64,000 nt of DNA from Chrysemys picta bellii (taxonomy: Eukaryota), in contig NC_088802.1 in NCBI RefSeq assembly GCF_011386835.1, forward strand, positions 1,550,001-1,614,000. Reading direction: 5' to 3'. Below, one piece after another: positions 1-10,029 of the stretch. Made by a program: the position numbers and the translations under genes. Positions within the stretch are counted from its first letter, which is position 1, and every line of letters starts with the position of its first letter. Under the pieces are notes generated by a model, which saw nothing but the letters and a program-made list of their open reading frames with translations, had not been told where the DNA came from and did no database searches.

Positions 1-3215
<3,215 letters not shown>

Positions 3216-3249: not shown

Positions 3250-3700
3250 CAACCGCCCCACCCAATCGCAGCGCCGAGTCAGCCCGCGCCAGCCAATCAC
3301 AGCGCGCGGGAGGCGGGGCCCGAGCGAGATCAGCCAACGGGGAAGCGACTTCCGCTCCGATCTTCGGGAATGGGCGTGGCCGCGGCAGCATGGCGAGAGC
3401 GGCGCACGCGCGGAACGGGGATACTGGGGCGGCGCGCAGCACGGCGCATGCTCACAGGGCGGGAGCCTCTCCCTGCGCCTGCCTGAGTTATAGGAGCCTG
3501 AGACGCGTCTGCGTGAGTTTGGAGACAGCGACGCGCATGCGCGAAGCGGGGTGGACATGCGGCGTGTGGACAGCACTCCAAAGAGCGCATGCGTAGCTTT
3601 GAGACCCCCCCCTCCCCCAACTGCCCCCGCCAAGTCCGAGCTACGCGTGCGCAGCGGCGCACTGCCTCCTGGGACGTGTAGTTCCGGTCCCCCTTAAAGG
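3250..3700. promoter_or_regulatory. CpG-island promoter of ATF6B
   Basis: CpG-rich. CCAAT boxes at about 3261 and 3293; NRF1-type GCGCATGCGC at 3533-3542; ZNF143/SBS-type CTGGGACGTGTAGT at 3669-3682; GC boxes. Confidence 0.7.
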
Positions 3701-3919
3701 GCCAGTAGCGACTCATGCTCCAGGCCGGCTCCCAGAGGGACTCAGCCACCCCCCACCTATAGGCCAGAGCCGGTGGGTGAGGTCACATCCTTCTGTGATG
3801 TCATCAACATTCCATATGCTGACATCACCACCCTCCCTCTGTGACATCACACTATGCCAACAGCACAAGCAGTGATGTCATAAGGCTGCATGACATCATC
3901 AGTTCACCCCCTCGAGGGA

Positions 3920-4550
3920 ACATGCCCCTGCCCCATTCCCCGCCCCCCTGAGCCAGCCAATCCCTGTCCTGGGGCCGGATGGGAGCCGGCGCCCCCTAGA
4001 GGGGACAGGCCCCTGCCCCGCTGAGCCAGCCAGTCCCTGCCCTGGGGCCAGATGGGAACCGACGCCCCCTAGATGGGACAGGTCCTGTGCCCCACTCCCC
4101 GTCCCCCTGAGCCAGCCAGTCCCTGCCCTGGGGCCGAGTGGGAGCCGGCGCCCCCTAGAGGGGACAGGTCCTGTGCCCCATTCCCCGCCCCCCTGAGCCA
4201 GCCAGTCCCTGCCCTGGGGCCAGATGGGAACCAACACCCCCTAGATGGGACAGGCCCCTGCCCCATTCCCCATTCCCCATCCCCCTGAGCCAGCCAGTCC
4301 CTGCCCTGGGGCCAGATGGGAACCGACACCCCCTAGATGGGACAGGCCCCCGCCCCGCTGAGCCAGCCAGTCCCTGCCCTGGGGCCAGATGGGAACCGAC
4401 GCCCCCTAGATGGGACAGGCCCCTGCCCCATTCCCCATCCCCCTGAGCCAGCCAGTCCCTGCCCTGGGGCCGGGTGGGAACCGATGCCCCCTAGAGGGGA
4501 CAGGTCCCATGCCCCATTTCCCACCCCCCTGAGCCAGCCAGTCCCCCAGC
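3920..4550. repeat. About 86-bp tandem repeat family C (cgccccctagaggggacagg)
   Basis: About 7 copies; same family as 11590-11890. Confidence 0.88.
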
Positions 4551-4740
4551 AGCTCCAATCCAACAAGAACCCCTCACTTGGCGCTTTTGCACAGTGGCCT
4601 CTGAAACCTATTTATTCTGAATTCCTTTTTGGGTTACAGTGGGGTCGGGGGGGTCGGTGTCTCGGGTCCGTCCGCTGCCCACGACTCTGGGAGTTGCCAG
4701 ATGAACCGTCATTCGCCCCTCGCCAACCCCACTGTGAGCC

Positions 4741-6461
4741 TCAGGAGGGCCGTCCCGGTGCCCCCCGTTCTGCTGGGACCTGGGGAGTGCACCCCAGGGG
4801 GACAGAGTCCAACGGAGCCACCACTGGCCGAGGGGTTACATCTTTCTTGTCACCTATGGGGGGAAGAAAGAGGGGTACCTAGAGAGTTACTTGGGGTGTT
4901 AACAGGCACCCCCAAAATCCACTGTACTCCCAACATTGTCCCTGACAGTCTCCCAGTGGGATGTGCTCTCCCAATATATTGGGGGGGGCCAGAAATCACT
5001 GATATATTGTGGGGTGTGCTAGGAGGTAGCACCTTGAAGCAGTGAAAGTTTTGGGGTGCACACAAAGAGCAGAACAGAGGAGTTTCAGGATGGTAGAACG
5101 GAGGTGATTTCCAGATATGGCAGGATATGAGGGACCTAGAGGGATTGCATTTTGCAAAGATGTGGAGTGATTTTGGGGTGCAGAATTGGGAACCCCAGAG
5201 ATTAGGAGGCATTTTGTGGTGCAGGGAGACCAAAAATCAGGGTACACAAGAGTGGGAAACCCTAACAAAGATCTGGATGGTGTAGGTCAGTTTGAGGGTT
5301 TGGAACAAGAGACTCCCCCAAATGATGGAAAGATTTGGGGATACCGAATAGATGCAGAACAGGTCAGTGGGCCCCAGAAAGATGTTAAAGGATTCTGGGG
5401 TACAGCTTCAGTTTTGAGGTGTAGAAGAGGGAGAATCTCTACAAAGAGATCTGAAATTTGGGGGGAGGGGGGTAGAATCAGGAAGACACTTTATGAATAT
5501 AGAGAATTTTGGAGGTTCGGAAAAGGGGGAATCTCTGCCCATAGATAGGAGACTTTGGGGGTGGACAAAGGGGCCCTCACAAAATCAGGGAGGGATTGGG
5601 AACAAAATGGGTGAAAACTGGGGTGCAGGACAAGGTGAAGGCCAAATTAGGGGTACAGAACAGCTACATATTGGAAGTGTAGATCAGGGAGTTTTGGGGG
5701 TGAGCTGTAGGGAGGTGGGGGAGATTGGGGGGGGACTCAGGGTCCAGCCAGTGGGGTGCACTCTCTTGTTTAGGTAGGGGTGCTACATAAACGGGTGCCC
5801 TGTGAGTGTATTATGGGTGAACTGGGGTGCTGGAAAAGGGGGTTCAGCATTAGAATGGGGGAGTTTGGGGTGCTGATAATGGTGTGATCCAGTGAGGGAA
5901 TTCAGGACCATTTGGGGGCATGAACTGGGGACCCCAAGAGTTGGGGTGTACCGACAAGAGGGCATAGGAGTTAGGGGGTACAGGCATAGAGGGGCAGCTT
6001 CCTGGGGACGGAGGAGGGGATTTTAGGGTGCAGAACTGGGGATCCTTCGAGGGCAGACTGGGAAGCTTTGGGGTGCAGTTCACAGGGGTGGGGCACCCCA
6101 CAGGGACTCAGATTGCTTCCAAGGGGGCTGCGTGGGGACAGGGGCCCACCAGCAAAGAAAGGGGGTGCACTTACCTAGGTCCTTGCGCCGGCTGGGGGGC
6201 AGGGGCGCCCCAGGGTCGTCCCGACGCAGAGCCGAGGCGATTTGCCGCCCCACATAGCGGCAAGCTGCTGGGAGAGAGACGGGGGCTCATTGAGGGGTGA
6301 TCTGGGGGCGCAGTGCACCCCCTTTTCCATCCCCCCGGATCCCTACTCGCCAGCACCCCCCAGACCCTGCCTAGTGCCCCCCGGGCCCCCCTTCCCACCA
6401 CCCCGCAGCTTTCCCGGGGCCCCCGGGCCCCCCACTCACCCCCAATGACCAGTCAGACCAT
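4741..6461 (-). CDS. Putative small three-exon gene (75 codons, in-frame TGA at codon 3); coding status uncertain
   Basis: Exons 6461-6440 (donor gtgagt), 6267-6175 (acceptor ctctctcccag, donor gtaagt) and 4853-4741 (acceptor ttccccccatag) join in one frame: MV*LVIGAACRYVGRQIASALRRDDPGAPLPPSRRKDLGDKKDVTPRPVVAPLDSVPLGCTPQVPAERGAPGRPS-stop. AATAAA on the minus strand at 4616-4611. Confidence 0.45.
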
Positions 6462-6469
6462 GCCGGACC

Positions 6470-6560
6470 CAGCTGGGCGCTGACGTAAGCGGCATGGAAA
6501 TAAAGCGGGAGGGGGAGGGGGAGGGAGAGCAGGGGATTCTGGGAAATGTAGTCTTCAATG
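6470..6560. promoter_or_regulatory. Promoter-like motif cluster upstream of the small minus-strand gene
   Basis: CRE-like TGACGTAA at 6481-6488 and ZNF143/SBS CTGGGAAATGTAGT at 6539-6552. Confidence 0.5.
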
Positions 6561-7079
6561 CTGCCCCCTCTGCTAGCCCCCCCCCGACACCTGGGTTCAT
6601 AACCCCCCCTCCCCCTCGCGAGTGTGGATCAAGGGGTGAACTAATGAATACTTAACCCTGTCTCTCCTGGATGCCTGGGTTCGCACCCCTCCCTCGCCCT
6701 GAATTAGGGGGTACAGAGCCCCCTAAAAAACTCCATCTTCCCTGGACACCTGGGTTCACACTCCTGAATTAGGGGTACGGTCTCCCCTCCCTTTACCCCA
6801 TCTTTCCCTGGCCCCCGGGGGGGGTTCTCACTCCTGCTTCCCCTCCCCCTGGTCCCGCACAGGTGGGGTACGATCTACCCCCCAATCCCAGCACCCCAGG
6901 ACCCACCCTCCCTATCCCCCCATTCCTGCCCTCCCCCACCCCTGAATCCCCCCCTCTTCCCCATCCCTCCCAACAGCCCCTTCTTCCCCATCCACATCTG
7001 CACCCCCTTTGCCCCCCTCAATCTTGGGGTGCGTCCCCGATCTCCCCAGCTGCAACCTAGCCCCCCCCACGCAGGGTCA

Positions 7080-7411
7080 GCCACCGGCAGCCATCTTGTT
7101 TGGCCAACCCCAGTGCCCAGGGGCAGAGGGATTTGGGGGGGAGACCCCCCCCCCAGCGCCCCCAATCGTTTGCTGCTTCTTAACACACTGATGGAGCCCG
7201 GGGTCCCAGCCCCCTTTCCCTTGTGGGGGGCAGGGAGGGTCTGGGCCTGGCCCCTCCCCACACGGCTCAGCCTGGCTAATCGAGGCAGGCTGCGGCCTAG
7301 CGGGGCCGCCCCCAGGAAGTGATGCAAAGACAAGGGGGGGCGGCGGGGGGAAGCCGGAGGAGCGGGGCCAGAGCGCAGCTGGATCCCCCCAGTCTGCGCC
7401 CCCCGCCTGGG
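7080..7411 (+). promoter_or_regulatory. Probable FKBPL promoter and non-coding first exon
   Basis: YY1-type GCCATCTT at about 7090, GC box, ETS CAGGAAGT at about 7314, splice donor gtgagg at 7412. Downstream acceptor ttcacag ends at 8180, ahead of the ATG at 8275. Confidence 0.5.
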
Positions 7412-7479
7412 GTGAGGGGGGGGCCAAGGGGGCACAGCTGGGCAGGGAGGAGCGAGGGAGCAGGGCAGAGACAGACAGC

Positions 7480-8150
7480 ACAGCCCGAGCGGGGGAGGGA
7501 GCCAGGACTCCTGGGTTCTCTGTGTGGGGGCTGGGAGCCAGGACGCCTGGGTTCTCTTGAGGGGGGAGGGCTTGGAGCCAGGACTTCTGGGTTTTCTCGA
7601 GGGGAGGGGCTAGGAGCCCAGATGCCTGGATTCTTGGGGCGGGGGGTGGTCTAGCAGATTAGGGGAGGGGGCTGGGAGCCAGAACACCTGGGTTCTCCGG
7701 CTGGGGGTCTAGTGGTTTACTGGGCGGGGCTGGGAACCAGGACTCCTGGGTTCTCTTGAGGGGGGAGGGCTTGGAGCCAGGACTCCTGGGTTCTTTTAGG
7801 GGGGATCTACTGGGTTAGAGGGGGGGCTGGGAGCCCGGATGCCTGGGTTGTCGTGGGGGATGGGGGGGTGTCTAGCAGATTAGGGGAGGGGGCTGGGAGC
7901 CAGGATGCCTGAGTTTTCTTGGGCGGGGAGATGGGAGCCGGTCTCCTAGGTTCTTTGGGGGGAGTGGTCTAGTGGATTAGTGAGGGGACTGGGAGACAGG
8001 ACGCCCAGGTTCTCTTGAGGGGGGAGGGCTGGGAGCCAGGACTCCTGGGTTCTCTTGGGGGCGGCTGGGAGCCAGAACACCTGGGTTCTTGGGGTGGGGG
8101 TCTAGTGGTTTACTGGGGGGGCTGGGAGCCAGGACTCCTGGGTTCTTTCT
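7480..8150. repeat. Minisatellite family B (gggctgggagccaggactcctgggttctct) in the FKBPL intron
   Basis: Degenerate tandem copies. The same family recurs at about 35140-35480, 42160-42470, 43380-44110, 53090-53540, 55950-56200, 56580-57540 and 60060-60330. Confidence 0.88.
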
Positions 8151-8274
8151 GATCCGTTTCCCCTGCCCTCTGGTTCACAGGAGCTGCCCGTCCCTGAACC
8201 CCCCAACCCTGCCTGGCTTCACCTCTTGGGGGTGCCAAGCCAGACCCCCGCACTCCCTGCTTGGCCAAGGGCAG

Positions 8275-9195
8275 ATGGAGGCACCGGCAGTAGCCAATGG
8301 GAAGGCAGAGGGCAGCGGAGCAGCCAATGGGATGAGTGGTGCCAGCAGAGGCGCTGAGCCCCAGGGCGCGGGGCCAGAAGAGGACCAGAGAGAGAACCTG
8401 CAGGCGCCCAGTCAGCCAGCGGACGCCTGGGTGGCACCGGACGGCGCCTTCGCCAAGCAGATCCTGCAGCCGGGCGCGGGACTGGACAAGCCGACGCTGG
8501 GCGCCCTGTGCCAGGTCTTCCTGGAGGCGCCGCCGGGGGCACCCCTGGGGTACCCAGCCAACCGCTGGGCCCAGCTGGAGCTGGGGGAGGGGGACGGCGC
8601 CTGGGACGGCCTGGTGGACGCTTGCCTGGAGACCATGGGGCCGGGGGAGCGGGCCGAGCTGCGGGGCCCGGACGGGGCCGTCCTGGGGCTGCACCTGGCC
8701 TCCTTCACCCCGGCCCCGGAGCCCTGGCAGCTGGACCCAGCGGAGAAGTGGGCACTGGCCCTGCGGCACAAGGAGCGCGGCTCGGAGCGCTACCGGGCTG
8801 GCGAGGTGGGGGCGGCCGCCCGGCGCTATGCCCGGGCCCTGCAGCTGGCCATCGCCGCCGGCCCGGTGCCCCTGGACCCAGAGCACGCCCGCCTTCGGGC
8901 CGACCTGCACGCCAACCTGGCCGCCTGCCAGCTGCGGCTCACCCAGCCAGCCCACGCCGCCCGCAACTGCACCAAGGCGCTGGCGCTGTGGCCCCAACAC
9001 GCCAAGGCCCGGTACCGCCGCGGCCTGGCCCGCGCCGCCATGAACGACCTGGAGGGGGCGGCCGAGGATTTCCGGGGGGTGCTGGTGGCTGAGCCGGGGA
9101 ACACGGCCGCCCGCAGGGAGCTGGACAGGGTGGGGCAGCGGGCGCGGGAGCGGGACGCCCGCCTGGCTCGGGCCATGAGCAAGCTCTTCTCCTGA
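8275..9195 (+). CDS. FKBPL: FK506-binding protein-like (degenerate FKBP domain plus TPR repeats), single coding exon, 306 aa
   Basis: MEAPAVANGK...LVDACLETMGPGERAEL...KERGSERYRAGEVGAAARRYARAL...LHANLAACQL...KARYRRGLARAAMNDLEGAAEDFRGVLVAEPGNTAARREL...SKLFS. TPR motifs, adjacency to ATF6B, AATAAA at 9350-9355. Confidence 0.93.
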   Translation: MEAPAVANGKAEGSGAANGMSGASRGAEPQGAGPEEDQRENLQAPSQPADAWVAPDGAFAKQILQPGAGLDKPTLGALCQVFLEAPPGAPLGYPANRWAQLELGEGDGAWDGLVDACLETMGPGERAELRGPDGAVLGLHLASFTPAPEPWQLDPAEKWALALRHKERGSERYRAGEVGAAARRYARALQLAIAAGPVPLDPEHARLRADLHANLAACQLRLTQPAHAARNCTKALALWPQHAKARYRRGLARAAMNDLEGAAEDFRGVLVAEPGNTAARRELDRVGQRARERDARLARAMSKLFS

Positions 9196-10029
9196 GCGCG
9201 GCAGGGACAGAGCCTGGACCCTGCATGTGGGGTGGGGCAGGGGGCCCTTCCCCTCTATGGGGCGCCGGCTCCCATCCGGCCCCAGGGCGGGGACTGGCTG
9301 GCTTGGGGGGGGAATGGGGCCCGGGCCCACAATAATTGTCAGTTTCGATAATAAAATTAATTTCTTAAAATACAAAGAAATCTTGTTGTTGAAACAAGAA
9401 AATCACGAAGTTGGGAGCAGGTCAAAGGTTGTGGTCCGGCCGTTCCGATTGGCTGCCGGTTGGACAGCGGGATGTGCCGGGGTCAGGGGGCAGCGCCCTG
9501 GGGTCAGAGGTCACTGGGAGTTGAGGCCTTTTCCTGCTTGCTCGCACCCAGGTCGAAGGCCTGAGGCCTCAGGTGCCATTTTGGGTCAAAGGTCATCAGT
9601 CCGGGCTAGTTGGCCAATCCCTGGTGGGGTTGGGTCAAAGGTCAAGTGTGGACGGAACCAAAGAAAAGTGGCACGTGTAGGGTCAAAGGTCACAGGAAGT
9701 GGCCAGGTCCATTGGTTGTGCTCTGGGTGGCCTGGGTCCAAGGGCAGGTGCTGAGGAGGGAGCCAATCAGGCTGTCAGGTCAGAGGTCATGGACACTGGC
9801 TGACACTCCAACTTCAGCTCCGTGGGAAGGTCACAGGCACCGTTACCGTGGCCGGGTCAGAGGGCAGAGGTCACGGAGGGATGCTGGCAGGCAGCAGGGC
9901 TCCATCTGCAGCCCCCAGCCGCTGCGCCGGTTAATGGGGCCTGTCCCAGGGCATGGGGGGCCCCGCGTGGGCCAGGCGGCGGGAGGTGCAGCAGGCCCCA
10001 AATCCACCTCGGAGCCCTTCACCCACGCC

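What the first reader, a model, noticed from the sequence alone, without database searches (positions are those of the whole stretch)
4600..6470. Unlisted three-exon minus-strand gene with an in-frame UGA at codon 3 (selenoprotein or readthrough candidate)
Seen: strong splice sites (GG|gtgagt 6440, ctctctcccag|cag 6267, AG|gtaagt 6175, ttccccccatag| 4853), a symmetric phase-1 93-nt middle exon, a stop at 4743-4741, AATAAA at 4616-4611 and a CRE/SBS promoter. All three exons keep one frame from the ATG at 6461, giving 75 codons: MV(UGA)LVIGAACRYVGRQIASALRRDD.... I recognise no known protein or selenoprotein family in it. Four readings are possible: a novel selenoprotein, a nonsense allele or base error of a TGG/CGA codon, a uORF-controlled micropeptide, or a spliced lncRNA.
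Basis: partly seen in the sequence, partly recalled or inferred. Interest (0 to 1): 0.72.

Follow-up and report, generated by a model that had tools for sequence, protein, structure and literature searches.

The report
Candidate new reptile selenoprotein gene
Between the turtle genes FKBPL and ATF6B lies a small, expressed, three-exon gene whose third codon is a UGA "stop" kept for about 270 million years in turtles and lizards, together with a conserved selenocysteine-insertion hairpin after the reading frame, so it is most likely an undescribed selenium-containing protein that gene annotation misses.

Summary

- **Expression.** RNA-derived contigs from four runs join exon 2 to exon 3. One run also joins exon 1 to exon 2.
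- **The UGA is ancestral.** ATG-GTS-TGA is present in seven hard-shelled turtles, a lacertid (Podarcis) and a gecko (Eublepharis), always between FKBPL and ATF6B.
- **It is read as codons.** Codons on both sides of the UGA differ almost only at third positions: Leu CTG/CTT/CTC, Ile ATT/ATA, Gly GGG/GGT/GGA, Val GTC/GTG. The 75-codon frame, exon phases and terminal UGA are kept, and the observed indels there are multiples of three.
- **SECIS-like hairpin.** 28 nt after the stop lies a type-II fold with invariant AUGA, AA and GA, 95% pairing and three compensatory pairs between turtles and lizards.

Against this:
- Rfam's SECIS models do not hit.
- The 3' core flanks (YGAG) deviate from the published KGAW.
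- No Cys-form homologue was found.
- There is no selenium-labelling or mass-spectrometry evidence.

The gene looks degenerate in Emydura and was not found in Carettochelys or at a Rhea locus. The peptide matches no Pfam family and has no relatives in 5.8 and 1.84 billion proteins. The latest vertebrate selenoproteome survey covers known families only.

Confidence about 0.7; interest high.

The parts
6532..6552 (-). ZNF143/Staf-type site (ACTACATTTCCCAGAATCCCC) in the promoter
   Evidence: Present in all eight other turtles aligned (invariant in the durocryptodires; Carettochelys and Emydura carry a few substitutions in its 3' part), with a matching site in Podarcis and Eublepharis.
6481..6488 (-). 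CRE-like TTACGTCA
   Evidence: Kept in most turtles: variant in Pangshura (TCACGTCA), Chelonoidis (TTACGTGC) and Emydura (CAGCGCCA).
6440..6467 (-). Exon 1, with the 5' end known only to at least 6467. Holds ATG 6461-6459, GTC, TGA 6455-6453 (proposed Sec codon 3), then CTG GTC ATT GGG G
   Evidence: Junction to exon 2 seen in X2. ATG-GTS-TGA and the following four codons are conserved at amino-acid level, with third-position changes, in 7 turtles plus 2 squamates.
6268..6439 (-). Intron 1 (172 nt, GT..AG), partly retained or bypassed in some contigs
   Evidence: joint 6267->6440 in X2. X1 record 7 and X5 record 21 read on to 6346 and 6336. In the unspliced form the frame meets TGA at 6289-6287.
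6175..6267 (-). Exon 2, 93 nt, phase 1-1, with a tandem CAGCAG acceptor (alternative start 6264). Encodes (A)ACRYVGRQIASALRRDDPGAPLPPSRRKDL
   Evidence: tblastn of P0002 to the Podarcis exon gives E = 4e-5. The squamate exon is 96 nt with the same phases.
4854..6174 (-). Intron 2 (1321 nt)
   Evidence: Removed in contigs of all four runs.
4741..4853 (-). Coding part of exon 3 (GDKKDVTPRPVVAPLDSVPLGCTPQVPAERGAPGRPS) ending in stop TGA 4743-4741
   Evidence: The stop is at the same place in 6 of 7 durocryptodires. The frame is also open with a UGA stop in both squamates.
4641..4727 (-). SECIS-like type-II hairpin in the 3' UTR. Helix I 4719-4714/4656-4650; AUGA 4712-4709; helix II 4707-4698/4674-4665; unpaired AA 4695-4694; helix III 4693-4688/4681-4675; GA 4663-4662
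   Evidence: RNAalifold consensus. Nine-species alignment A7. Pair counts: 95.1% paired, 3 compensatory pairs, slid controls 30-49%. Lizard MFE has the same fold with z = -3.2. Own covariance model finds a single copy in the window.
4611..4616 (-). Polyadenylation signal AATAAA
   Evidence: Conserved in the 7 durocryptodires. RNA contigs end at 4623-4647.
8181..9195 (+). Context: FKBPL coding exon (CDS 8275-9195), head-to-head neighbour. Its alternative 5' exon 3401-3512 is spliced across the candidate gene
   Evidence: 97% to Chrysemys picta bellii FKBPL.

Best explanation
This is a previously unannotated small selenoprotein gene of sauropsids. It lies head-to-head with FKBPL and upstream of ATF6B.

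A promoter carrying ZNF143-type and CRE-like sites drives a three-exon mRNA. Translation starts at AUG 6461. The UGA at codon 3 is recoded to selenocysteine by a type-II SECIS hairpin in the 3' UTR (AUGA 4712-4709). Translation ends at the second UGA (4743-4741), which sits only 28 nt before the SECIS core and is therefore read as a stop.

The product is a 75-residue protein, or 74 with the downstream tandem acceptor. It begins M-V-U-L-V/I-I-G-x(1-2)-C-R-Y-V-x-R-x-I-A-x-x-L-R, a Sec...Cys pair on a short hydrophobic/amphipathic N-terminus, followed by a fast-evolving, probably disordered Pro/Arg-rich tail.

**Shown:** the exon structure and expression, conservation of the UGA, the codon-type conservation around it, and the conserved and covarying hairpin.

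**Inferred:** Sec insertion itself; a thiol/selenol redox role for the U-x(5-6)-C pair; and that selenium shortage would end translation after two residues and expose the mRNA to nonsense-mediated decay.
For: **1. Spliced RNA.** Intron 2 is removed in four runs and intron 1 in one.

**2. The UGA is ancestral.** ATG GTS TGA is found in Chrysemys, Platysternon, Mauremys, Pangshura, Chelonoidis, Eretmochelys, Lepidochelys, Podarcis and Eublepharis. In every case it sits in the same FKBPL/ATF6B/PRRT1 synteny.

**3. Coding signature across the UGA.** Exon-1 differences fall at codon positions [1,0,5] for turtle versus gecko and [0,0,4] for lacertid versus gecko. The next 18 codons give [4,2,10]. 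Within turtles, 24 of 41 non-CpG changes are at third positions in this frame (p = 0.0008), with 26 synonymous against 27 non-synonymous changes, compared with about 25% synonymous in the other two frames.

**4. Frame-preserving changes.** The observed length changes are a 3-nt deletion in Pangshura, a 3-nt acceptor shift in Lepidochelys, a 96-nt versus 93-nt exon 2, and a one-codon indel between the two squamates. Exon phases are identical and the ORF ends in UGA at a conserved C-terminus, E-x-G-x-x-(K/R)-P-x-(S/T)*.

**5. The hairpin.** AUGA, AA and GA are invariant across nine species. 95.1% of cells are paired. Compensatory changes are C-G<->U-A in helix II and C-G<->U-A and A-U<->G-C in helix III. 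The same fold is the MFE in the lizard, with z = -3.2.

**6. Not a conserved non-AUG start.** The codon after UGA is CTG, CTT or CTC.
Against: - Rfam 15 reports no SECIS family: not at gathering score on the window, nor at E <= 10 on 2.4 kb, on 271 nt of the turtle 3' exon, or on the lizard 3' exon. I had no known SECIS available as a positive control for that tool.
- The 3' core reads YGAG. The published consensus is KGAW (PMC3753652): K is met only in Mauremys and Podarcis, and W never.
- No Cys-containing homologue was seen. Every intact orthologue has TGA, and no relatives exist in the protein libraries.
- No known vertebrate selenoprotein has Sec this close to the start (my own knowledge: the earliest I know of is Sec13 of SELENOW).
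- Within turtles the exon substitution rate (0.23-0.30 changes per site) is no lower than that of the 3' UTR, and exon mismatch is similar to intron 2. Constraint on the C-terminal two thirds is therefore weak.
- Chelonoidis has a 1-nt deletion in exon 3, and Emydura has lost the ATG, the frame, the stop and the AA motif.
- In two of the four runs the main contigs retain part of intron 1.
Confidence: 0.7

Rival explanations
1. The frame is translated, but the UGA is passed by Sec-independent readthrough, with a near-cognate tRNA inserting Trp, Arg or Cys. The conserved 3' UTR hairpin would then serve another purpose such as stability, localisation or protein binding.
For: UGA followed by C is conserved in every species (TGACT), and from my own knowledge UGA-C is the leakiest stop context. 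Rfam finds no SECIS. The 3' core flanks are non-canonical (against PMC3753652).
Against: The known high-efficiency motif UGA-CUAG is absent: the sequences are CUG-G, CUU-A and CUC-A. Basal readthrough of a few percent would be an odd way to make a conserved protein. This reading leaves unexplained why a hairpin with invariant AUGA, AA and GA at SECIS-like spacing, and with compensatory changes, sits just after the ORF in all three lineages.
Confidence: 0.12
2. It is a conserved spliced non-coding RNA made from the FKBPL-side divergent promoter. The open frame and the ATG...TGA would then be by-products of GC-rich sequence and packed transcription-factor sites: a ZNF143-type site, a CRE, the TGACTGGTCA palindrome and a reverse CCAAT.
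For: NCBI gene calls place no protein gene between ATF6B and FKBPL in Emydura, Carettochelys, Mauremys, Pangshura, Podarcis or Eublepharis. There is no AUG-initiated ORF without a stop. Turtle exons evolve about as fast as the intron. The unit is degenerate in Emydura and absent in Carettochelys and at the Rhea locus. The ESM Atlas's stored model of the public sea-turtle protein P0002 (used as a stand-in for the peptide) has pLDDT 0.33.
Against: Third-position-only differences in the seven exon-1 codons across roughly 270 My, including Leu CTG/CTT/CTC and Gly GGG/GGT/GGA, are not what binding sites predict. The squamate sequence there (CTTATAATTGGT) also breaks the palindrome. Exon phases, ORF length, stop position and 3n indels are all conserved. 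The substitution periodicity has p = 0.0008.
Confidence: 0.1
3. AUG-GUN-UGA is a two-codon upstream ORF, and the downstream frame is started independently at a near-cognate codon or by reinitiation, giving a micropeptide without Sec.
For: A minimal uORF in good Kozak context (GGCAUGG) is conserved in the durocryptodiran turtles; both squamates have A at -3 and G at +4. In turtles CUG follows directly.
Against: The following codon is CUU in Podarcis and CUC in Eublepharis, and neither is a near-cognate start. No in-frame AUG exists in the turtle ORF; squamates have only non-conserved internal Met codons. The Val codon inside the 'uORF' itself varies only at its third position. This reading does not explain the SECIS-like hairpin.
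Confidence: 0.05
4. The TGA is a nonsense allele, an assembly error, or a recent pseudogenising change in the painted turtle.
For: None remains. The window does differ from all RNA contigs at two other bases, 4791 and 4796.
Against: TGA is at the same codon in nine species of three deep lineages.
Confidence: 0.01

Closest known systems
SELENOK / SELENOS (small, largely disordered vertebrate selenoproteins with one Sec)
   Same: Small size. One Sec close to a terminus. A Gly/Pro/Arg-rich low-complexity body predicted to be disordered (Atlas model of the public protein P0002, pLDDT 0.33). A 3' UTR SECIS.
   Different: In those proteins Sec is second or third from the C-terminus and there is a transmembrane helix (my own knowledge). 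Here Sec is residue 3 and no long hydrophobic segment exists. There is no sequence similarity: Pfam gives nothing at E <= 10 and phmmer finds nothing beyond the two sea-turtle models.
SELENOW (small selenoprotein with the most N-terminal Sec known to me, Sec13 in CxxU)
   Same: A short protein with an N-terminal Sec near a Cys.
   Different: SELENOW has a thioredoxin-like fold and a CxxU motif. Here the spacing is U-x5/6-C, there is no Rdx/thioredoxin-like Pfam match, and the locus is different.
Eukaryotic type-II SECIS element (core UGAN/KGAW, apical AA, extra helix III; PMC3753652)
   Same: AUGA on the 5' arm and GA on the 3' arm at the base of a 10-bp helix II. An unpaired AA 13 nt after AUGA. 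A short helix III with a 4-6 nt loop. Location in the 3' UTR. Covariation supports the fold.
   Different: The 3' core is YGAG rather than KGAW. Rfam's SECIS covariance models give no hit.
Programmed stop-codon readthrough genes (UGA-CUAG class)
   Same: A conserved in-frame UGA followed by C, with coding conservation downstream.
   Different: The CUAG motif is absent. The UGA is at codon 3 rather than at the end of a normal ORF. A SECIS-like element is present.

Membership tests
Eukaryotic selenoprotein gene | In-frame UGA conserved among orthologues, with protein-coding conservation on both sides | tested here: met
   TGA at codon 3 in 7 turtles, Podarcis and Eublepharis. Flanking codons differ almost only at third positions. 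Frame periodicity within turtles has p = 0.0008.
Eukaryotic selenoprotein gene | SECIS stem-loop in the 3' UTR with tandem GA/AG core (AUGA ... GA) | tested here: met
   A15-A19 (AAUGA) and G65 A66 are invariant in alignment A7. They sit opposite each other at the base of helix II.
Eukaryotic selenoprotein gene | Core flanks fit the consensus UGAN/KGAW (PMC3753652) | tested here: not met
   5' UGAC fits. The 3' side is CGAG in most species and UGAG in Mauremys and Podarcis. The final W is G in all nine.
Eukaryotic selenoprotein gene | Conserved unpaired AA (or CC) in the apical loop or bulge at a set distance from the core | tested here: met
   A33 A34 are invariant, 13 nt after AUGA, between helix II and helix III. 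Emydura has CA.
Eukaryotic selenoprotein gene | Helices supported by base-pair conservation and covariation | tested here: met
   95.1% of 144 cells are paired. Three pairs carry compensatory changes. 0 of 500 shuffles reach the covariation score. Slid controls pair at 30-49%. Caveat: only three deep lineages, and the structure was derived from these sequences.
Eukaryotic selenoprotein gene | Recognised by a curated SECIS covariance model | tested here: not met
   No Rfam SECIS hit at gathering score or at E <= 10 in turtle or lizard. SECISearch3 was not available, and no positive control was run.
Eukaryotic selenoprotein gene | [quoted passage not shown] 1996) | tested here: met
   Summing the exon pieces gives about 250 nt of mRNA from UGA 6455-6453 to AUGA 4712. 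The terminal UGA is only 28 nt before AUGA (about 30 nt in the two squamates by the letters), which fits its being a true stop.
Eukaryotic selenoprotein gene | Homologues with Cys aligned to the Sec position | tested here: inconclusive
   None seen. All intact orthologues carry TGA. Protein libraries hold no relatives except two mis-modelled sea-turtle entries. Only 12 loci could be fetched.
Eukaryotic selenoprotein gene | Selenium actually incorporated (75Se labelling, mass spectrometry) | not testable with these tools
   Needs bench work.
Any of the 19 known vertebrate selenoprotein families (PMC13134290) | Sequence homology to a known family | tested here: not met
   Pfam gives no family at E <= 10 for the exon peptides or for P0001/P0002. 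phmmer against 1.84 billion representatives finds only the two turtle models.
Long non-coding RNA | No reading frame conserved beyond chance | tested here: not met
   The frame, phases, stop and 3n indels are conserved from turtles to geckos.
UGA-CUAG programmed readthrough | CUAG immediately after UGA | tested here: not met
   The sequences are TGA CTG G, TGA CTT A and TGA CTC A.

The most novel reading that the evidence does not exclude
This is a new selenoprotein family, unrelated to the 19 known vertebrate families. It would date back at least to the common ancestor of turtles and squamates, with selenocysteine as residue 3 (residue 2 after likely removal of the initiator Met). That is the most N-terminal Sec in any vertebrate protein. 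Failed recoding would yield only a dipeptide, making expression an all-or-none read-out of selenium supply. Homology-based selenoproteome surveys would have missed it, and several lineages have lost it (pleurodire and trionychian turtles, possibly birds and mammals).
Probability: 0.65. Interest if true: 0.9.

Novelty: new variant of a known kind. Interest (0 to 1): 0.85.

Why it matters
Vertebrate selenoproteomes are regarded as essentially complete. The 2012 survey (PMC3316567) and the 2026 survey of 340 genomes (PMC13134290) both searched only for homologues of known families. The 2026 paper states that lineage-specific selenoproteins may have been overlooked.

If this gene is real, it adds a new family to tetrapods. 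It shows that Sec recoding can operate at the third codon. It also gives a natural system in which failed recoding produces no truncated protein at all.

It shows in addition how annotation pipelines handle such genes. NCBI calls nothing here, and two sea-turtle annotations invent non-canonical junctions or another start in order to avoid the UGA.

The gene lies in the MHC class III region beside ATF6B, an ER-stress factor, and FKBPL. That position gives a starting point for functional work.

Tried and rejected
1. **SECIS by Rfam.** Four searches, no hit. I kept this as evidence against, but did not treat it as decisive once covariation was found.

2. **My first working view was a promoter-associated lncRNA.** It rested on three observations: no AUG for the frame in either isoform, equal exon and intron mismatch between turtles, and the degenerate Emydura copy. 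I abandoned it after the Podarcis and Eublepharis loci showed the same ATG-GTN-TGA and the same frame.

3. **Frame B** (ATG 6255-6253, invariant in turtles) as the real ORF. Rejected: it runs only 5 codons in Podarcis, and its stop is not conserved in turtles.

4. **An ORF starting at the ATG inside the AUGA core** (MTVHLATPR...). Rejected: indels that are not multiples of three follow in several species.

5. **A resemblance to the micropeptide STMP1**, recalled from memory. No Pfam or HMMER support, so dropped.

6. **CpG hypermutability as the cause of third-position excess.** The excess persists in non-CpG changes, [11, 6, 24].

7. **The long outer stem of the 3' UTR as an independent structured RNA.** z = -2.65 but no compensatory change. 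It is best read as helix I and its extension.

8. **ESM Atlas look-alikes of P0002.** Nothing above chance.

Exons were handled one by one by reference, and the public sea-turtle protein P0002 stood in for the joined product in protein searches. A protein read through the UGA was not submitted to any tool.
Full report
**Observation**

On the minus strand the window reads ...TTACGTCAGCGCCCAGCTGGGTCCGGC ATG GTC TGA CTG GTC ATT GGG G|gtgagt.
- ATG 6461-6459 and TGA 6455-6453
- donor after 6440 and acceptor before 6267
- exon 2 at 6267-6175 (93 nt, phase 1-1), with its donor after 6175
- acceptor before 4853, stop TGA 4743-4741, AATAAA 4616-4611

Translating exon by exon gives ACRYVGRQIASALRRDDPGAPLPPSRRKDL and DKKDVTPRPVVAPLDSVPLGCTPQVPAERGAPGRPS*.

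Exons were treated one at a time by reference.

**Context**

An earlier scan note names the genome as painted turtle. FKBPL at 8275-9195 on the plus strand is 97% identical to the Chrysemys picta bellii protein.

The candidate lies head-to-head with FKBPL and upstream of an ATF6B-like gene on the same strand. One RNA contig joins a plus-strand exon at 3401-3512 to the FKBPL exon at 8181. In that isoform the candidate is nested antisense in an FKBPL 5' intron.

**Expression and splicing**

I laid contigs of four runs, with four organism labels and four studies, on 3300-9200.
- All four remove 4854-6174 exactly (CT..AC on the plus strand), so they derive from spliced RNA of the minus strand.
- One X2 contig removes 6268-6439.
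- Two X2 loose ends (CCCAATGAC after 6265) fit use of the second CAG of the CAGCAG acceptor, 3 nt on and in frame.
- In X1 and X5 the main contigs run on through the acceptor to 6346 and 6336, so a form retaining part of intron 1, or starting inside it, also exists. In that form the frame meets TGA at 6289-6287 with no AUG after it.
- Contigs end at 4623-4647, just upstream of the poly(A) signal.
- All runs read G for A at 4791 and 4796 (plus strand).

**First impression, and why it changed**

Rfam showed no SECIS. The frame has no AUG free of a stop.

A word search with the exon-3 ORF found only two 'unnamed protein products', from Lepidochelys and Eretmochelys. Their models avoid the UGA in different ways. 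One starts 'MV|ACRYVG', and the other starts at an ATG in another frame. From the letters, both need non-canonical junctions.

Their loci and six more turtle loci reached through FKBPL orthologues gave alignments. ATG GTS TGA CTG GTC ATT GGG G|GT is present in all seven durocryptodires. This rules out an allele or an assembly error.

Other points still argued for a non-coding RNA at that stage:
- Exon mismatch was about equal to intron mismatch.
- Emydura lacks the ATG, has a 21-nt insertion in exon 2 and a 2-nt deletion in exon 3, reads CGA in place of the stop, and has no AATAAA.
- Carettochelys lacks the ATG.

There were 26 synonymous against 27 non-synonymous changes, compared with about 25% synonymous in the other two frames. 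Among non-CpG changes, 24 of 41 fall at third positions, p = 0.0008.

The single frameshift, in Chelonoidis, lies in an assembly region that also carries an inverted, indel-ridden second copy of the same exon. It may therefore be an assembly error.

**The decisive comparison**

Podarcis raffonei and Eublepharis macularius have the same ATF6B(-) / FKBPL(+) / PRRT1(-) synteny. Both hold the same unit between ATF6B and FKBPL:
- a ZNF143-type site
- exon 1: ATG GTC TGA CTT ATA ATT GGT G|gtacgt in Podarcis, and ATG GTG TGA CTC ATA ATA GGA G|gtatgt in Eublepharis
- a 96-nt phase 1-1 exon 2 encoding (V/A)CRYVAR(R/K)IAASLR(N/R)EDLGEP...
- an exon 3 open in the same phase for 35-36 codons to a UGA, with a shared end E-V-G-x-x-K-P-x-(S/T)*

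Across turtle, lacertid and gecko the seven exon-1 codons read M V * L (V/I) I G. Leu is CTG/CTT/CTC, Ile is ATT/ATT/ATA, Gly is GGG/GGT/GGA and Val is GTC/GTG. Differences by codon position are [1,0,5] for turtle versus gecko and [0,0,4] for lacertid versus gecko.

This is what selection on a translated sequence produces. It spans the UGA. CTT and CTC also exclude a conserved CUG start.

**The hairpin**

The most conserved part of exon 3 lies after the stop. RNAalifold on the turtles alone had already drawn the following layout: helix I, an internal loop holding AUGA, a 10-bp helix II, unpaired GCAA, helix III and a 6-nt loop.

Nine species align over 87 columns without a gap. Invariant bases are:
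- AAUGA, window 4713-4709
- AA, window 4695-4694
- GAG, window 4663-4661

For helices II and III, 95.1% of cells pair. Three pairs change on both sides between turtles and squamates: C-G to U-A in helix II, and C-G to U-A and A-U to G-C or G-U in helix III. No shuffle of 500 reaches the covariation score, and slid partners pair at only 30-49%.

The same fold is the minimum-energy structure of the Podarcis sequence on its own, z = -3.2. It is also the minimum-energy structure for the gecko and the painted turtle.

By the description in PMC3753652 this is the architecture of a type-II SECIS: a GA/AG core, conserved apical adenines and a third helix. The 5' core UGAC fits UGAN. The 3' core YGAG departs from KGAW at its flanks. 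That departure, together with having no control for Rfam's sensitivity, is why I do not go above about 0.7.

The terminal UGA is 28 nt before AUGA in the turtle and about 30 nt before it in the squamates. By established spacing requirements (my own knowledge) that is too close for recoding. The codon-3 UGA lies about 250 nt upstream in the mRNA.

**Distribution**

A covariance model built from the nine hairpins gives these results:
- one copy in the window
- the expected copies in the lizards
- a weak hit in Emydura at 30.8 bits, where AA has become CA and 8 nt are missing
- nothing within 10 kb of FKBPL in Carettochelys
- nothing in the part of a Rhea contig that could be fetched (one search also found none of the motifs there)

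The gene therefore appears to be ancestral to turtles plus squamates and lost more than once. Mammals, crocodilians, amphibians and fish could not be examined, because the look-ups were exhausted.

**Comparison with what is known**

- The exon peptides and the two public models match no Pfam family at E <= 10.
- Word search of 5.8 billion proteins and HMMER against 1.84 billion representatives return only the two sea-turtle entries, plus two long low-complexity hits.
- The Atlas model has pLDDT 0.33, which suggests disorder.
- No paper in the library links FKBPL to a selenoprotein gene (the search terms were 'selenoprotein' and 'FKBPL' only, ATF6B was not searched).
- The vertebrate selenoproteome papers list known families only (PMC3316567; PMC13134290). 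The 2026 paper says explicitly that novel lineage-specific selenoproteins may have been missed.
- The tuatara genome paper counts 26 selenoproteins without describing a new family.

**Mechanism proposed**

- *Shown:* a promoter with conserved ZNF143-type and CRE sites; a spliced and polyadenylated mRNA; a conserved AUG-GUN-UGA followed by a conserved frame; a conserved hairpin after the stop.
- *Inferred:* SBP2 and eEFSec acting through the hairpin insert Sec at codon 3.
- *Inferred:* the initiator Met is probably removed before Val, leaving Sec as the second residue.
- *Inferred:* Sec and the Cys five or six residues later form a redox pair on a short hydrophobic/amphipathic N-terminus, followed by a disordered tail under weak constraint (omega about 0.4 in turtles).
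- *Inferred:* when Sec insertion fails only Met-Val is made, and the mRNA, with two exon junctions downstream of the UGA, should be a target of nonsense-mediated decay.

**Verdict**

The nonsense-allele and base-error reading is refuted. The lncRNA and uORF readings are unlikely.

The best reading is a new small selenoprotein gene with Sec at residue 3, at about 0.7. Sec-independent readthrough is the main rival, at about 0.12.

Noticed in passing
window 3401-3512 (+) joined to 8181 (+): One RNA contig (X1) splices a plus-strand exon at 3401-3512 to the FKBPL coding exon across 4.7 kb (GT..AG). In that isoform the candidate gene sits antisense inside an FKBPL 5' intron, although the nearer promoter lies only about 1.7 kb from the FKBPL exon.
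   Followed up: partly
window 4791 and 4796: All four RNA runs read G where the window has A (plus strand). In the frame this changes Cys>Arg and Leu>Pro, and at 4796 restores the residue seen in all other turtles; at 4791 Arg is the commoner state, but Platysternon and Lepidochelys also have Cys. The reference individual carries variants here or the assembly is wrong at these two bases.
   Followed up: partly
window 6265-6270: Tandem CAGCAG (NAGNAG) acceptor of exon 2. Both sites seem to be used in X2. Lepidochelys and Emydura have lost the first AG and keep only the second. Squamates have a single acceptor.
   Followed up: partly
L001 6001-8812 and L002 6001-8573: The two public sea-turtle 'unnamed protein product' models (P0002, P0001) avoid the UGA. 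One starts 'MV|ACRYVG' and the other starts at an ATG in a different frame. From the letters, both require non-canonical splice junctions. They are examples of mis-annotation caused by a Sec codon.
   Followed up: partly
L006 6283-6363 (+) versus 1310-1396 (-): The Chelonoidis abingdonii assembly holds a second, inverted copy of the 3' exon and hairpin with many 1-nt deletions, and exon 1 lies in the opposite orientation to exons 2 and 3. This is probably an assembly artefact, and it casts doubt on the 1-nt 'frameshift' in the main copy.
   Followed up: no
window 3682 (-); L004 7661; L009 2558: A second ZNF143-type site (ACTACANNTCCCA) lies in front of the ATF6B-like gene and recurs at the matching place in Carettochelys and Podarcis. 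An earlier scan note reports a minisatellite of such sites 21 kb before the window.
   Followed up: no
window 4633-4641 with 4727-4735: Outer stem ACAGUGGGG/CCCCACUGU encloses the whole hairpin. Turtles vary on one side only (CA>UG or CG) in ways that keep G-U pairing. There are no compensatory changes, and the whole 121 nt has z = -2.65.
   Followed up: partly
window 4000-4300 and 7437-8150: tRNA-like SINE copies (GGTTAGAGCA...) give very high contig depth and many false joints in the read table. Intron 2 (4854-6174) is built largely of degenerate 'gcaccccaaa'-type units.
   Followed up: no
window 6441-6455 (-): The exon-1 coding bases in turtles also form a palindrome, TGACTGGTCA, and a reverse CCAAT box (CATTGG). 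The squamate sequences break the palindrome but keep ATTGG in Podarcis only. Overlap of coding and promoter-proximal signals is possible.
   Followed up: no
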